Shown here: positions 2,498 through 16,751 of the stretch, piece after piece
How the letters are laid out: each line of letters starts with the position of its first letter
Numbering within the stretch: position 1 is the first letter of the stretch
Sequence record: OQ722176.1
Direction: 5' to 3' (one strand)
DNA: 64,000 bases
Translations under genes and position numbers: made by a program
Notes under the pieces: model-generated
Seen by the model: only the letters and a program-made list of their open reading frames with translations
What the model was told of the DNA's origin: nothing
The model's database searches: none

Positions 2498-3016
2498 CTA
2501 TTTTCTGCGATTTGCTTTATTAGCTTTTCGCTTCGCTCTTCGCAGTTCTTTTCGTTTTGCTATTTTATCAGCACGTCTCACCGCGTCATAATCCGCTGCA
2601 CAAGACGCTGCGAACGCATCAGGCTTGAATACGGGCTCTTGACCCACATATCCCAAGATAGTCCCTTTAGCTTCGTTATACGCAATGTGAGAACGATGTG
2701 ACGGGTCAGGGTTGATGTCAACGTGAACTTCAAACCCGCGAGGGCCACACATTGGTTTGACTCGTAATGCAGTCTCACCAGCTTTGTATACTTCATTCAT
2801 CAAACGACTTCGAATACCGTCTTTGCAAGACATATAAGCAGGTTCTGTTTCGATAGTTTTGAATACTTGAGCGCCTTTACTACCCTCAAGGTGAATGATG
2901 ATTACAGTAGCGTAACTGATCATATCACTCTTACGCTTGCTATCACACCCGACATAGATCGTACTATTCGGGTGACTGTTATTGATAGCTGTTTCTATTG
3001 CTTCCCAATCGAACAT
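2498..3016 (-). CDS. YkuK/DUF458-like RNase H-fold protein
   Basis: IYVGCDS...YATVIIIH...RLMNEV...EVHVDIN...KPDAFAASCAAD motifs; start moved to ATG 3016 after GAGGTG SD. Confidence 0.75.
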   Translation of the reverse strand: MFDWEAIETAINNSHPNSTIYVGCDSKRKSDMISYATVIIIHLEGSKGAQVFKTIETEPAYMSCKDGIRSRLMNEVYKAGETALRVKPMCGPRGFEVHVDINPDPSHRSHIAYNEAKGTILGYVGQEPVFKPDAFAASCAADYDAVRRADKIAKRKELRRAKRKANKANRRK

Positions 3017-3032
3017 TGTCACCTCTGCAAAC

Positions 3033-3058
3033 AAAAAGGGCAGCATAATTGCCGCCCT
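3033..3058 (-). terminator. Intrinsic terminator after the vWA gene
   Basis: AGGGCGGCA/TGCTGCCCT hairpin + TTTT. Confidence 0.65.
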
Positions 3059-3065
3059 CGCTTAT

Positions 3066-4502
3066 TTAAAAGCTGTAGCGATCAACGCATACAGTTTTCA
3101 GCATGATCTTGACCGGCTCAAGTTCACCACCCAACAATGAAGTCAAGATTGATGGACTACAACCTGAAACCAACGCTGTACCCGCTTCGCCTGACTTAAC
3201 AGGAACGTTACCGATACGACCACGAATGTTCCAGAACACTAGTTGAGGCATTTCATAGCCTGCACGTGCGTACATGCCTTTGATTGCTTCGAAATTAGTA
3301 ATTTCGCCGCGACCATACCAACCACCACCGCGATTTGCTTCGTCGAATTCCATGTCGCTCATGATAAGCAACTTAGTTGGCATTTCTTCTTGTGAAAGTT
3401 TTGCCTTCTTCGCACGTTCTAGTAGAACGCTGAAACACTTGGTGATGTTAGTGCTCATGTCTTCGCCAGAGCGATTCATGTTGTCAAGACGCTCTTTCAG
3501 TGAGCTACCGCGCAACTGGTGGAAGTGCGGATCACTTGAGAACGAAATGAACTGGTCTTTGAAGATGCCTTCGTTACGTTCAGCAACGTAGATGCCTAGA
3601 GACATTGCAACTTGCTTACAAGAAACGCTTGAACGATCAGTACCTGCGTTGATCGGCGTGCTCATAGAGCCAGACACGTCTACAACAGGGATGATGCGCT
3701 CATCAGAACCTTCCATGTAGTTCGGTAGAGCTTTCCATTGCTCATTCGCTACAGATGCGTTACCGTGACTAACGCTTTTAACAACATCGTATGGGAACAA
3801 TGCAGCAGCGTTGATCTTCGCTTCACCTTTTTGAAGTGATTCGATGTAGCTTGTGTAACGTGTCGAAGCGTTACGACCGAATGCTTGTTGATAACGAGCA
3901 GACGCTACAGAAGGCAACTTACCGAAGTCGATTGCATCCCATTCTTGAGCACACATCTTTTGTTCAACGGTGTCAGACAAAAGAGCAAGAATCTTACGCC
4001 ACTGCTTCGCAGTCACACCAAGAGACTTGATTGTGCGCTTGAACACATGACCGTTTTTGCTGTTTTCACGTGGGAACCACTTCGCAGCAAGACCGTTTTT
4101 GTCATTGACAATTGCGTTTGACCACATAGTGATCGCGTCTTTTTCAAGTTTAGTACCGAATGCAACAATCAAGTCATCGAAACGACCTAATTCTGGTACT
4201 TTTGACATTACAGCACGAGCAACGTCTGGCTGTTCATTACAAAGTTTAGCGAACAAAGTACGGAAAGTACCACGTTCACCCGCGCCACCGCGAACGTCAC
4301 GAGACCATAGCAAGATGCGAGTCGCTAGTTCTGGGTTTTCTGCAAACGCACGACCGAACAGAGTTTTAGACTGATCGTTGCCACGCATAGCAGCAATACC
4401 GAAGAACAAGTTTAGACACTCGTTACCTGAAGTGCTGTGAGTAAGTGCACCGTTTGCTGTACGTGAATCGTTTGATTGCATAGCGTTCATAAATGCTGAC
4501 AT
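3066..4502 (-). CDS. DUF2828-like helical + vWA protein (Ro60/TROVE-like architecture)
   Basis: RDVRGGAGER and AAKWFPRE motifs, C-terminal vWA with MIDAS DVSGSM...T...SDMEFD; start moved to ATG 4502 after GAGGA SD. Confidence 0.75.
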   Translation of the reverse strand: MSAFMNAMQSNDSRTANGALTHSTSGNECLNLFFGIAAMRGNDQSKTLFGRAFAENPELATRILLWSRDVRGGAGERGTFRTLFAKLCNEQPDVARAVMSKVPELGRFDDLIVAFGTKLEKDAITMWSNAIVNDKNGLAAKWFPRENSKNGHVFKRTIKSLGVTAKQWRKILALLSDTVEQKMCAQEWDAIDFGKLPSVASARYQQAFGRNASTRYTSYIESLQKGEAKINAAALFPYDVVKSVSHGNASVANEQWKALPNYMEGSDERIIPVVDVSGSMSTPINAGTDRSSVSCKQVAMSLGIYVAERNEGIFKDQFISFSSDPHFHQLRGSSLKERLDNMNRSGEDMSTNITKCFSVLLERAKKAKLSQEEMPTKLLIMSDMEFDEANRGGGWYGRGEITNFEAIKGMYARAGYEMPQLVFWNIRGRIGNVPVKSGEAGTALVSGCSPSILTSLLGGELEPVKIMLKTVCVDRYSF

Positions 4503-4538
4503 TGTTGATTTCCTCATATTAAATTGCTGTATAATGTC
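4498..4538 (-). promoter_or_regulatory. Leader hairpin with UACAGCAA motif, occluding SD/AUG of the vWA gene
   Basis: GACAUU-A-UACAGCAA-UUUAAUAUGAGGAAAUCAAC-AAUGUC; the 3' stem strand contains the AUG. Confidence 0.65.
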
Positions 4539-4552
4539 GTTTTGATGTGATG

Positions 4553-4590
4553 ATTATACACGGATTTTAACCCGTGTAAACACTTTTTTG
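4553..4590 (-). promoter_or_regulatory. T4-type early (sigma70) promoter
   Basis: A-tract, GTTTAC-17-TATAAT. Confidence 0.75.
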
Positions 4591-7643: not shown

Positions 7644-7659
7644 CTAATGTGCAATTAAC

Positions 7660-7907
7660 AGACATTCGAGAAGTGTTTTTTTCGTCTTTCCTCAAATCTC
7701 AATTGACTATCTCGATGTTTCTCACCGAGAAAATACTCATGATTCAGCATGAGACCTATTTCGTTTGACAGTACGAACACCGTCTTAATGGTCATTTCCT
7801 ACCACGAGAATGCGACAGGCTCACGTCATAACTGAGAAAGCAGCTAGTGCGCCTCATTACTATTAAAGTTTGCTTCTTTGATTAGTAATAGTTGCTGTAC
7901 AATGTCT
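7660..7907 (-). ncRNA. ~250-nt structured RNA, copy A (UACAGCAA family)
   Basis: Closed by AGACAUU/AAUGUCU; shares covarying hairpins and blocks with 10333-10544. Confidence 0.65.
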
Positions 7908-10192: not shown

Positions 10193-10332
10193 ATATCTTG
10201 GTTTTGTATGTTTTACATGACGATAACCAGAAACGTGCATAATAATGCCACGTGATACATCCTATATCACGGCTAACTGAGTTAGCATATCGTGCCTTGC
10301 GGCTGTAGTGTCGTTTCCGACGAATTAAGTAC

Positions 10333-10544
10333 AGACAATACCGAAGTGTTTTTTCGTCTTTGACATGAATCGGAGTTGACTATCTTGTTATTCACAACAA
10401 GCAAATATCGTCTGTTTCAGCGACGCGCCTATCTGACTATTTCCAGGCAGAGAGAATCTTTCCTTTCAAGCTGCGCCGAAGCACTGCCCAGGTGAAGATC
10501 ATTACCTTTTTTAAGTAATTTTAATTTGTTGCTGTATATTGTCT
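10333..10544 (-). ncRNA. ~210-nt structured RNA, copy B (UACAGCAA family)
   Basis: Closed by AGACAAUA/UAUUGUCU; paralogue of 7660-7907. Confidence 0.65.
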
Positions 10545-11669: not shown

Positions 11670-11680
11670 TTGAATAAAAC

Positions 11681-11738
11681 AGTAATCCTTTTTGCTTTTT
11701 CCAAATAAAAGTTTTGTATTGTTTGCTGTAAGATTACT
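11681..11738 (-). ncRNA. Minimal 58-nt UACAGCAA-family RNA
   Basis: AGUAAUCU/GGAUUACU stem, UACAGCAA, CUUUU-AUUUGGA-AAAAG hairpin. Confidence 0.55.
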
Positions 11739-11743
11739 TAAAC

Positions 11744-12368: not shown

Positions 12369-12482
12369 ATTACCTTCTCTTAAAAATTACAGCTTGCGTT
12401 CTTTGGTCTGTTTATCGCTGTCTGGGCTATACCCGCCGAGCGATCAATAGAGTAAGTTAAATTGCAGTATGCAAGCTAAAAT

Positions 12483-14599: not shown

Positions 14600-14715
14600 T
14601 GGCAGTCGGGGCTGGATTCGAACCAGCGACCACGTGCTTAACAGGCAATTGAAAGAGTGCTGGAGCGATACTTGACAGTATCATTCTTCGTGCTCTACCA
14701 CTGAGCTACCCGACT
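14600..14715 (-). ncRNA. tRNA-Asn-like RNA with ~40-nt insertion (UCCAGCAC motif)
   Basis: Intact acceptor (G73, CCA), D and T arms; inserted hairpin + motif before GC-CUGUUAA-GC loop. Confidence 0.75.
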
Positions 14716-14720
14716 GTAAA

Positions 14721-15245
14721 TTATTTAACTTTGAACTTCAAATTTCGCCATTCAAAGTTGCGTTTGTTCTTTTCTTTGTAGAACGTATCCCAATCAATTG
14801 AAATCGGACAAGTCTGACTACCCACACGAGCGATAAACACGTCGTGAGTGTTGCTGTATCGCTCTCTAAGCTCTTTTACGCGCTTATCGTAGTTAGCGAT
14901 ATAGTCTGAACAAGCTTTATTGTACGCTGCTTTAGAGAAGCGTTTAGAAGCTTGAAAGTCATACCCAAGATACGGACGAATTACTCGAACACGTTCAGTC
15001 GACCATCCCATGTTGAAACTGTTCTCAATCTCACCCATGATCTTACCCGTCTTTTTACAACGAGCTAGGATAACCCAACAACGCTCACGTCGAAAATCTT
15101 TGCGTGTGTACACGTTGACATACTTTTCAATATAGTCATTGTACTTGTTGTTGTATATCGAGCGAAGTCTCGAACGTTCTTCAGGTGACATTGCGGCACG
15201 CTCTTCTTTTGAGAACGCTTGAGCAAATTTCAACGGAACATTCAT
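14721..15245 (-). CDS. Hypothetical protein (174 aa)
   Basis: ORF track; 4-nt overlap with upstream ORF. Confidence 0.7.
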   Translation of the reverse strand: MNVPLKFAQAFSKEERAAMSPEERSRLRSIYNNKYNDYIEKYVNVYTRKDFRRERCWVILARCKKTGKIMGEIENSFNMGWSTERVRVIRPYLGYDFQASKRFSKAAYNKACSDYIANYDKRVKELRERYSNTHDVFIARVGSQTCPISIDWDTFYKEKNKRNFEWRNLKFKVK

Positions 15246-16490: not shown

Positions 16491-16611
16491 TGGTGGAGAG
16501 TGGTGGATTTGAACCACCGACAAAAAGATTTACCTAGTTAGGGTTTGCAGCATGAATGCTTATCAGAATTCTTTAACATTCTTTTGCTCTACCAGACTGA
16601 GCTAACTCTCC
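16491..16611 (-). ncRNA. tRNA-shaped RNA with ~45-nt insertion (UGCUGCAA motif)
   Basis: Acceptor+CCA, D and T arms intact; AAAAGA/UCUUUU stem encloses GAUA-loop hairpin + motif. Confidence 0.75.
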
Positions 16612-16625
16612 GTTGTAAAAACATA

Positions 16626-16751
16626 TTGATGCGGGTGCAGGATTCGAACCTGCGTCACGATCTTATGAATGATATGCGAATTGATTGCCGTACAGATTCT
16701 TATCAGAATCAGTTTTTTTGCTACGTGTGCTAACCACTACACCAACCCGCA
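16626..16751 (-). ncRNA. tRNA-shaped RNA with insertion (UACGGCAA motif), no encoded CCA
   Basis: D and T arms intact; acceptor helix extends to 19 bp. Confidence 0.7.

What the first reader, a model, noticed from the sequence alone, without database searches (positions are those of the whole stretch)
4498..4538. Motif-bearing hairpin buries the SD and AUG of the vWA/TROVE-like gene (putative autoregulatory operator)
An early promoter (4553-4581) starts transcription roughly 8 nt before GACAUU. That hexamer pairs with AAUGUC, which contains the start codon; the loop holds UACAGCAA and the GAGGA SD. The stem is nearly identical to the closing stem of the 250-nt RNA (AGACAUU/AAUGUCU). This is the usual layout for translational feedback by an RNA-binding protein (inference) and is the strongest link between protein and RNAs.
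Basis: partly seen in the sequence, partly recalled or inferred. Interest (0 to 1): 0.8.

Follow-up and report, generated by a model that had tools for sequence, protein, structure and literature searches.

The report
Y-RNA mimic in Ro-like gene leader
The short hairpin in front of this Vibrio-phage gene copies the signature (end-stem plus UACAGCAA) of small RNAs that travel with this Ro60-like protein in many phages, so it is probably a self-regulation site, though that is untested.

Summary
The window is Vibrio phage vB_VspM_VS2, a KVP40-like phage. Alone the hairpin is weak (-2.2 to -3.7 kcal/mol, no better than shuffles). Only the AUG is paired; the SD sits in the loop.

The element is not chance. 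GACAUU-N-UACAGCAA...AAUGUC follows the layout of an RNA family: a 6-9 bp stem joining the 5' and 3' ends, then UACAGCAA 0-1 nt after the 5' arm. The window holds at least five such RNAs in its tRNA cluster.

The same RNAs lie beside homologues of the protein (40-54% identical) in about 30 of 38 phage lineages. They are always on the gene strand, and their stems differ in sequence. The protein (Pfam DUF2828+DUF7788) models as a Ro60 fold. Mid-size RNAs carry a permuted tRNA-like module like YrlA Y RNAs; short ones resemble Dictyostelium Class I RNAs.

In 10 KVP40-like leaders, 13 of 14 element bases are invariant against 12 of 31 other UTR bases. A second leader type, spread with a homing endonuclease, loses the stem but keeps UACAGCAA abutting the AUG.

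Best reading: an operator that mimics the protein's RNA partners, giving translational feedback. This is inferred; no binding or repression data exist.

The parts
4553..4580 (-). Sigma-70-like promoter: -35 TTTACA (4580-4575), 16-nt spacer, -10 TATAAT (4558-4553). Predicted start near 4546.
   Evidence: 11 of 12 matches. The -10 is invariant and the -35 nearly so in 10-11 relatives. The start site is inferred, not mapped.
4533..4538 (-). 5' arm GACAUU of the leader hairpin.
   Evidence: Invariant in all HEG-less relatives while the flanks vary.
4524..4531 (-). Octamer UACAGCAA, predicted single-stranded. It is the family signature, 1 nt after the 5' arm.
   Evidence: Matches the conserved core of the R1 model and of Rfam RF01414.
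4511..4515 (-). Shine-Dalgarno GAGGA, in the hairpin loop, 8 nt before the AUG.
   Evidence: GAGG is invariant.
4498..4503 (-). 3' arm AAUGUC holding the start codon (ATG 4502-4500). It is followed by AG, as in many family RNAs.
   Evidence: The upstream ATG at 4517 is out of frame in KVP40, so 4502 is the start.
3066..4502 (-). Gene for a 478-aa Ro60-like protein (KVP40.0300 homologue; DUF2828+DUF7788; phrog_850).
7658..7907 (-). RNA1, about 250 nt: AGACAUU-G-UACAGCAA...AAUGUCU-GU. It sits just after tRNA-Ser and is followed by a terminator at 7644-7620.
10331..10544 (-). RNA2, about 210 nt, a paralogue of RNA1: AGACAAU-A-UACAGCAA...AUUGUCU-GU. Its closing stem has a compensatory change relative to RNA1.
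11680..11739 (-). RNA3, 60 nt, short form: AGUAAUC-U-UACAGCAA...GAUUACU-G.
   Evidence: R1 42.1 bits, E 1e-8. Rfam RF01414 31.8 bits, below its threshold. Fold -8.4 kcal/mol, z -2.3.
12390..12478 (-). RNA5, 89 nt, with variant motif UACUGCAA and an 8-bp closing stem UAGCUUGC/GCAAGCUG.
   Evidence: z -2.0.
16563..16700 (-). RNA4 candidate, about 138 nt: AGAAUCU-G-UACGGCAA, then a T-arm (16653-16637), a D-arm (16604-16586) and the 3' arm GAAUUCU-G. This is a YrlA-like permuted tRNA layout.
   Evidence: (YrlA 30 bits, below threshold). Weakest member: the stem has a mismatch and the fold z is -0.3.

Best explanation
The 41-nt leader element is a miniature copy of the protein-recognition end of a phage Y-RNA-like family. 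That end is a helix joining the 5' and 3' ends, with single-stranded UACAGCAA directly after the 5' arm. The gene behind the leader encodes a divergent Ro60-type ring protein, which is the inferred partner of those RNAs.

Proposed mechanism: when free protein exceeds the pool of partner RNAs made from the tRNA cluster, it binds its own mRNA leader. Binding stabilises the otherwise weak helix that contains the AUG and covers the nearby SD. This blocks 30S binding. It is translational feedback by molecular mimicry, titrated by the RNAs.

Shown: the sequence layout, its conservation, the RNA family, RNA-gene co-occurrence and the Ro60 fold.
Inferred: that this protein binds the motif and stem, and that binding represses translation.
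For: - Layout matches the family register: G at -7, C at the pairing position, then A/U-G. The R1 model aligns the leader end to end.
- The family is real. Of 89 non-redundant gene-strand motifs, 51% have a perfect helix of at least 7 bp next to them, against 7.8% at random positions. In 27 short RNAs the stem is 97% paired with 39 double-change cells, and 0 of 500 shuffles reach that. RNA1 and RNA2 show compensatory changes.
- RNA and protein are linked. TACAGCAA occurs 119 times on the gene strand against 18 opposite in 76 loci. Density is 1.47 per 10 kb within 2.5 kb of the gene and 0.22 farther away. Variant-motif members raise coverage to about 30 of 38 lineages, all on the gene strand.
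- The protein has a Ro60 fold. The top 9 PDB matches are all Ro60/TROVE, with E 3e-9 to 7e-6 and TM 0.51-0.61 over about 500-570 columns. Invariant D275, S277, S279, T351 and D383 fit the spacing of a vWA MIDAS motif (DxSxS...T...D; recalled from general knowledge).
- Mid-size RNAs have the YrlA topology and sub-threshold YrlA hits of 35-39 bits.
- Leader conservation: 13 of 14 element bases invariant against 12 of 31 elsewhere, p 6.5e-4.
- The HEG-borne alternative leader keeps UACAGCAA between the SD and AUG.
Against: - There is no binding or expression evidence.
- The hairpin alone is no more stable than shuffles, and the SD is unpaired.
- The stem shows no covariation of its own, and its 3' arm is constrained by coding.
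- The HEG-type leaders lack a stem.
- F86 has UACAGCAU, a change at a position invariant in the RNAs.
- The R1 score is only 11.1 bits, significant only in a 501-nt search.
- Leaders of distant homologues lack the element, so any feedback is clade-specific.
- No autoregulation of canonical Ro60 came up in the two Ro60 papers checked.
- The stems were selected for pairing, so that count is partly circular.
Confidence: 0.45

Rival explanations
1. A functional binding site with a non-repressive role. The same factor binds the leader, but to stabilise the mRNA 5' end, to nucleate co-translational RNP assembly, or to mark it for processing, rather than to shut off translation.
For: The element lies about 8 nt from the predicted 5' end, a position where 5' structures commonly protect mRNAs (general knowledge). 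The weak helix and unpaired SD fit poorly with simple occlusion. Family RNAs must be excised from tRNA-cluster precursors, and their conserved ends ((A)G...C-U/A-G) could double as processing signals.
Against: The 3' arm contains the AUG, and the HEG-type leader places the octamer directly against the AUG. A bulky ring protein there would be expected to hinder initiation. No nuclease is implicated.
Confidence: 0.2
2. An evolutionary remnant. In several lineages family RNA genes lie directly upstream of the protein gene. The KVP40-type leader would be a shrunken copy of such an RNA that drifted onto the start codon and now has little or no function.
For: RNA genes end 25-280 nt upstream of the ATG in L036, L056, L066, L076, L078 and L081. 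The leader is shorter than any bona fide member (41 nt against 52-64) and scores only 11.1 bits. F86 has a motif change.
Against: The element is the most conserved part of the UTR across phages only 78-83% identical overall. An unrelated leader type independently carries the octamer at the AUG. A remnant should decay like its flanks.
Confidence: 0.15
3. The motif and stem are recognised by a different factor, such as a host RNA chaperone or nuclease, or another phage protein. The Ro-like protein would then not be the regulator. The leader and the RNAs share a signal for that factor.
For: In Dictyostelium, the only direct binder shown for the look-alike Class I RNAs is an RRM protein, Rnp1A/CIBP (PMC7919456). 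No experiment ties DUF2828/DUF7788 proteins to RNA.
Against: Across 38 lineages the Ro-like gene was the only tested partner consistently next to these RNAs. Six KVP40-type neighbour ORFs have no homologues in the distant loci. The Ro60 fold binds stems formed by RNA ends (PDB 1yvp).
Confidence: 0.15
4. Chance: a coincidental 6-bp complement around a common octamer.
For: Hairpin energy equals that of shuffles. With a 330-nt search range, 6-bp helices occur at 22% of random positions.
Against: My rough estimate of the joint chance of the exact octamer in a ~60-nt UTR plus an in-register 6-bp helix within 60 nt is about 1e-5 to 1e-4. In addition there is an exact 15-mer identity with RNA1, conservation, and a second leader type with the octamer.
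Confidence: 0.03

Closest known systems
Ro60 (TROVE+vWA) with Y RNAs, especially bacterial and phage Rsr/YrlA (Chen et al. 2014, PMC4201824; Thermus phage phiLo Ro60 with Yrl1/2, PMC12135203)
   Same: The ring-plus-vWA fold is predicted. The RNA genes are on the same strand next to the protein gene. The RNAs are closed by a helix of their 5' and 3' ends, with a conserved motif on the 5' strand. One RNA class carries a permuted tRNA-like module (T-arm, capped acceptor-like hairpin, D-arm). The genes sit among tRNA and tmRNA genes.
   Different: There is no Pfam TROVE match; the domains are DUF2828+DUF7788, and the Rsr model scores 11.7 bits against a cutoff of 900. The recognition motif is UACAGCAA, not GNCGAA or the bulged GGUCCGA helix. 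YrlA model scores are 30-39 bits against a threshold of 69. No leader mimic or autoregulation came up for canonical Ro60 in the two papers checked.
Dictyostelium Class I RNAs (Rfam RF01414; Kjellin et al. 2021, PMC7919456)
   Same: Length is 42-65 nt. A short stem joins the 5' and 3' ends, with structure but not sequence conserved. The conserved motif sits directly after the 5' arm, and its core is identical (CCUUACAGCAA; many phage RNAs read CCUUACAGCAA exactly). The RNA starts with G, and the 3' arm is followed by C-U-G(U).
   Different: The phage RNAs score 25-32 bits, below the Rfam threshold of 41.5. They have a bacterial-phage context, not a DUSE/Pol III context. The only direct binder shown in Dictyostelium is an RRM protein. 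Class I RNAs were reported as unique to Dictyostelia. Homology versus convergence is undecided.
Translational operators that mimic the regulator's primary RNA ligand (ribosomal-protein operons, ThrRS operator, T4 gp32/gp43/RegA; general knowledge)
   Same: A short element overlaps the initiation region of the regulator's own mRNA and resembles the RNA that the protein normally binds. A weak structure is expected to need protein to be stabilised. Competition with the abundant ligand would set the level.
   Different: No binding or repression has been measured here. The regulator would be a Ro-type ring protein, for which I know of no such operator.

Membership tests
Ro60/TROVE protein family | HEAT-repeat ring (TROVE) followed by a vWA domain, as a fold | tested here: met
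   AF2 model with pLDDT 82.8 and pTM 0.81. The top 9 Foldseek PDB hits are all Ro60/TROVE over about 500-570 columns, with TM 0.51-0.61.
Ro60/TROVE protein family | Sequence match to the TROVE/Rsr family models | tested here: not met
   Pfam gives only DUF2828 and DUF7788. NCBIfam Rsr scores 11.7 bits against a cutoff of 900. No PDB sequence hit to Ro60.
Ro60/TROVE protein family | vWA MIDAS motif (DxSxS...T...D) | tested here: met
   D275, S277, S279, T351 and D383 are invariant in 33 homologues. Assignment to MIDAS is by position and general knowledge.
Y RNA / YrlA (RF02553) | Conserved Ro-binding motif GNCGAA(N)G near the 5' end of the stem | tested here: not met
   The conserved motif is U-N-C-N-GCAA, mostly UACAGCAA.
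Y RNA / YrlA (RF02553) | tRNA-like module closed by the protein-binding stem; encoded near the protein gene on the same strand | tested here: inconclusive
   Topology is seen in L030, L036, L056, L066 and L084 and in window RNA4. YrlA scores are 30-39 bits against a threshold of 69. Same-strand adjacency is met.
Dictyostelium Class I RNA (RF01414) | [quoted passage not shown] | tested here: met
   Short forms are 52-64 nt, and many carry CCUUACAGCAA. The definition comes from PMC7919456.
Dictyostelium Class I RNA (RF01414) | Score at or above Rfam's gathering threshold (41.5 bits) | tested here: not met
   24.9, 27.9, 30.8 and 31.8 bits. No hits at the gathering threshold.
Dictyostelium Class I RNA (RF01414) | DUSE promoter about 60 nt upstream; Pol III-type termination | not tested
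   This is a eukaryotic feature and was not looked for. The phage RNAs sit in tRNA clusters or beside the protein gene.
Autoregulatory translational operator (ligand mimicry) | Element overlaps the ribosome-binding region of the regulator's own mRNA | tested here: met
   The AUG is in the 3' arm and the SD is 8 nt from the motif. In HEG-type leaders the motif abuts the AUG.
Autoregulatory translational operator (ligand mimicry) | Element resembles the regulator's primary RNA ligand | tested here: inconclusive
   Same motif, register and end bases as the family, but only 11.1 bits. That the RNAs are ligands of this protein is inferred from co-occurrence and fold.
Autoregulatory translational operator (ligand mimicry) | Protein binds the element and lowers translation | not testable with these tools
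   Needs gel shift, toeprinting and reporter fusions.

The most novel reading that the evidence does not exclude
DUF2828/DUF7788 proteins and UACAGCAA-stem RNAs form a previously undescribed, very widespread Ro60/Y-RNA-like RNP of phages; more than 7,800 protein homologues were found in metagenomes. The Dictyostelium Class I RNAs, reported as unique to social amoebae, would belong to the same ancient RNA family, perhaps with a DUF2828-type partner. One candidate is the uncharacterised pull-down protein DDB_G0281243. The KVP40-type leader would then be the first case of a Ro-type protein controlling its own translation through a Y-RNA mimic.
Probability: 0.25. Interest if true: 0.9.

Novelty: new variant of a known kind. 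Interest (0 to 1): 0.8.

Why it matters
- It gives a function-level hypothesis (RNA-binding ring protein with dedicated small RNAs) to a large family of unknown function. The family is abundant in marine phages and also present in eukaryotes.
- It defines the RNA signature that makes the RNP testable.
- It offers a compact, mutable 41-nt element in which protein-RNA recognition can be read out as reporter expression.
- It challenges the view that Class I-type RNAs exist only in Dictyostelia.
- It suggests how phages balance a Ro-like protein against RNAs made from their tRNA islands.

Tried and rejected
- Hairpin stability as evidence: rejected, z 0.07 to -0.9.
- Rfam at gathering thresholds on the window and six loci: only tRNA and tmRNA were found.
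- Collection scan for GACATTNTACAGCAA in IMG/VR: more than 118 scattered matches, apparently mostly chance, and not informative.
- MAFFT with flanks misaligned the 3' arms. I redid it with register-defined ends.
- Looking for a conserved protein neighbour: six ORFs flanking the gene (DUF458 and five others) have no homologues in the distant loci.
- Leaders of distant homologues: no shared element.
- MotA-box reading of the reverse complement TTGCTGTA: rejected by eye. The motif is on the transcribed strand and no suitably spaced -10 follows on the + strand.
- The second TACAGCAA inside the CDS (4461-4454): judged coding. It spells Thr-Ala-Asn, with Thr15 and Asn17 invariant, and it is absent in the VH7D group.
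- Testing whether Dictyostelium DDB_G0281243 is a DUF2828 protein: the sequence and the 2011 paper are not held. The protein search lists only the closest 120 hits.
- No functional literature on DUF2828, DUF7788 or PF11443 in the held library.
Full report
**Identity and context**

The window is identical to Vibrio phage vB_VspM_VS2 and 78-98% identical to KVP40-like phages across this region. Genes here run on the - strand. The gene behind the finding (3066-4502, 478 aa) is the homologue of KVP40.0300. RefSeq annotates it as 'RNA-binding protein'.

Pfam sees only DUF2828 and DUF7788. PHROGs places it in phrog_850. The NCBIfam Rsr model gives a negligible 11.7 bits. About 3 kb upstream of the gene begins a cluster of 27-29 tRNA genes.

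**Checking the observation**

- GACATT at 4538-4533.
- TACAGCAA at 4531-4524.
- GAGGA at 4515-4511.
- AATGTC at 4503-4498, with the ATG at 4502-4500.

The promoter TTTACA-16-TATAAT matches 11 of 12 consensus positions. Its -10 is invariant in relatives. A start near 4546 would lie 8 nt before the stem; this is inferred, not mapped. An upstream in-frame ATG at 4517 is out of frame in KVP40, so 4502 is the true start.

The helix appears in the predicted MFE fold, but it is weak:
- -2.2 kcal/mol (z 0.07) for the hairpin alone.
- -4.5 kcal/mol (z 0.38) with flanks.
- -3.7 kcal/mol (z -0.9) from the predicted start.

The SD lies in the 29-nt loop. Only the AUG is 'buried', and only if something stabilises six base pairs.

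**What the element is**

The octamer is over-represented: 10 copies against 2.6 expected, 9 on the transcribed strand. The 15-mer GACATTNTACAGCAA recurs exactly at 7906 and with one mismatch at 10543.

Reading those sites showed two paralogous RNAs.
- RNA1 (7907-7658) starts AGACAUU-G-UACAGCAA and ends AAUGUCU-GU.
- RNA2 (10544-10331) starts AGACAAU-A-UACAGCAA and ends AUUGUCU-GU.
- The U-to-A change in the 5' arm is compensated in the 3' arm.
- Across KVP40, VH7D, K575 and K566 they share the closing stem and a conserved 3' block. They also share a sub-terminal helix with compensatory changes.

A third RNA, RNA3 (11739-11680, 60 nt), has a different stem (AGUAAUC/GAUUACU) but the same layout. 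K575 has a further one with the stem GAGUGU/ACACUC.

The rule is therefore a 6-9 bp helix joining the two ends, with UACAGCAA 0-1 nt after the 5' arm. The leader obeys it, with its 3' arm being the start-codon region.

**Link to the protein across phages**

I fetched 80 IMG/VR loci encoding homologues that are 40-54% identical, apart from two KVP40-type loci at about 95%.
- In the 76 distant loci the octamer occurs 119 times on the gene strand and 18 times on the other. About 19 would be expected on each strand.
- The copies usually lie just after the stop codon or just upstream of the gene.
- Nearly all have a perfect 7-8 bp helix whose sequence differs between lineages. Examples are GGUUCC, GGAUCG, AGAUUCC, GGAUGGC, AGGAUGA and AGGAAGG.
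- A perfect helix of at least 7 bp adjoins 51% of 89 non-redundant gene-strand motifs. The figure is 0 of 15 on the opposite strand and 7.8% at random positions.
- On an alignment of 27 short members the stem is 97% paired with 39 double-change cells. None of 500 shuffles reaches that, and slid registers reach only 20-52% paired. Those rows had been chosen for having a helix, so one search is the unbiased test.
- Exact-motif RNAs with a stem of at least 7 bp occur in 22 of 38 protein lineages. Their density is 1.47 per 10 kb within 2.5 kb of the gene and 0.22 farther away.
- A covariance model (R1) finds variant-motif members in eight more lineages. The variants are UUCAGCAA, UGCAGCAA, UACUGCAA and UACGGCAA. 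All 17 hits are on the gene strand.
- None of six KVP40-type neighbour ORFs has a homologue in the distant loci.
- tRNA or tmRNA genes accompany the gene in about 20 of 32 loci.

**The protein**

An AlphaFold2 model built on 33 homologues has pLDDT 82.8 and pTM 0.81. Over nearly its whole length it matches only Ro60/TROVE structures: Thermus phage phiLo Ro60 (9kop, 9l5y), Xenopus Ro60 (1yvr, 1yvp, 2i91) and 9nep. E-values run from 3e-9 to 7e-6 and TM from 0.51 to 0.61. All later hits are isolated vWA domains.

D275, S277, S279, T351 and D383 are invariant, and their spacing fits a vWA MIDAS motif. The family has more than 7,800 members in metagenomes. I found no functional literature on it in the held library.

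**The RNAs compared with known families**

- Mid-size members (110-139 nt) contain a T-arm, a capped acceptor-like hairpin and a D-arm in permuted order, closed by the motif stem. This is the YrlA topology described by Chen et al. (PMC4201824). They hit Rfam YrlA at 35-39 bits against a threshold of 69.
- The window has a candidate of this kind, RNA4 (16700-16563, variant motif UACGGCAA, YrlA 30 bits).
- The window also has an 89-nt member, RNA5 (12478-12390, UACUGCAA).
- Short members hit Rfam Dicty_Class_I_RNA end to end at 25-32 bits against a threshold of 41.5.
- The Rfam consensus reads GaUcuCCUUACAGCAAU...GagAuCUG. Many phage RNAs read ...GGUUCCUUACAGCAA...GGAACCAG.
- Kjellin et al. define Class I RNAs by the same three traits: 42-65 nt, an end stem conserved in structure only, and an 11-nt motif after the 5' arm. 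The preprint version adds a conserved 3' CUGU. Both versions report Class I RNAs as unique to Dictyostelia (PMC7919456 and its preprint).
- The resemblance is striking, but it fails Rfam's threshold. Homology is undecided.

**Is the leader a genuine, constrained copy?**

Evidence for:
- In 10 HEG-less KVP40-like phages, including the divergent F86, GACAUU and UACAGCA are invariant while the surrounding UTR varies. Thirteen of 14 element columns are invariant against 12 of 31 others (Fisher p 6.5e-4). The columns are not phylogenetically independent.
- The leader aligns end to end with R1 in the family register (G at -7, C opposite it, then A-G).

Evidence against:
- The R1 score is only 11.1 bits, significant only in a 501-nt search.
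- The stem never varies, and its 3' arm is fixed by AUG-UC(A). It therefore has no covariation of its own.
- F86 reads UACAGCAU, a change at a base that is invariant in the RNAs.

An informative natural variant: three phages from two sub-clades (VH1_2019, CZ01, D483) carry a GIY-YIG homing endonuclease gene inserted just upstream. Their leader is replaced and the N-terminus is altered. The stem is gone, yet the new leader reads GGAGCU-UACAGCAA-UG, with the octamer between the SD and the AUG. That is a second architecture placing the octamer on this gene's initiation region. I estimate the chance of this at about 6e-4 for a 40-nt span.

**Mechanism**

The best-supported reading is molecular mimicry. 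The Ro-like protein is inferred to bind the end-stem plus octamer of its partner RNAs, much as Ro60 binds the stem formed by Y RNA ends. The leader offers the same determinant over the AUG. Excess protein would then repress its own translation, and the RNAs would relieve that by competition.

The steps shown are sequence layout, conservation, RNA-gene co-occurrence and fold. The steps inferred are binding and repression. I put this at about 0.45.

Alternatives:
- Same binding but a stabilising, assembly or processing role (0.2).
- A decaying remnant of an upstream RNA gene (0.15).
- Recognition by another factor (0.15).
- Chance (0.03).

**Novelty**

In the two Ro60 papers checked I found no mention of Ro-type autoregulation. 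The RNP partnership itself (DUF2828/DUF7788 with UACAGCAA RNAs) does not appear in Rfam or in the literature I could search. It is a new variant of the Ro60/Y RNA theme, and the leader is a new variant of operator mimicry.

Noticed in passing
window 4557-4578 (both strands): The promoter's 16-nt spacer is a palindrome (ACACGG...CCGUGU). On the + strand it reads as a terminator-like hairpin followed by a T run. The arms change in a compensatory way between phages (ACGGGTTTAAACCCGT in nt-1, ACGCGCTT...AAGCGTGT in K575). It may stop antisense transcription or be a DNA operator.
   Followed up: partly
window 14603-14715 (-) and 16494-16611 (-): Two tRNA-model hits of 113-118 nt that ARAGORN does not call. 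They have normal acceptor, D and T arms but about 40 extra nt in the anticodon region. K575 annotates 110-123-nt 'tRNAs' at the equivalent places. They could be intron-bearing tRNAs or tRNA-like RNAs.
   Followed up: no
window 16563-16700 (-): The YrlA-like candidate RNA4 shares its D-arm and the acceptor 5' strand with the long tRNA-like gene at 16494-16611. The same DNA could therefore fold as a permuted or as a standard tRNA-like molecule.
   Followed up: partly
L002 854-1456, L003 863-1453, L210 263-856: A GIY-YIG homing endonuclease gene is inserted, on the opposite strand, directly upstream of the Ro-like gene in VH1_2019, D483 and CZ01. These phages belong to two sub-clades, which implies horizontal spread together with the replaced leader and N-terminus.
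   Followed up: partly
window 4454-4461 (-) and 4414-4421 (-): A second TACAGCAA lies 41 nt into the CDS (codons Thr-Ala-Asn; absent in the VH7D group). A GAGUGUCU inside the CDS could pair with the leader's 5' arm as an alternative long-range helix, 7-9 bp in VH7D and K575.
   Followed up: partly
L030 8605-9054; L035, L047, L049, L053, L057, L070, L076, L083: Phage-encoded tmRNA genes lie within a few kb of the Ro-like gene, on the same strand, in many distant lineages.
   Followed up: no
window 2498-3046 (-): The gene just downstream is a DUF458/YkuK-type protein, annotated as RNase H-like in relatives (phrog_11311). It is conserved next to the Ro-like gene in KVP40-like phages but not in distant loci.
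   Followed up: partly
window 14851-14858 (-): Another TACAGCAA inside an ORF, flanked by a 6-bp helix (GAGCGA/UCGCUC). It is one base off the family register. It may be chance or an embedded element.
   Followed up: no
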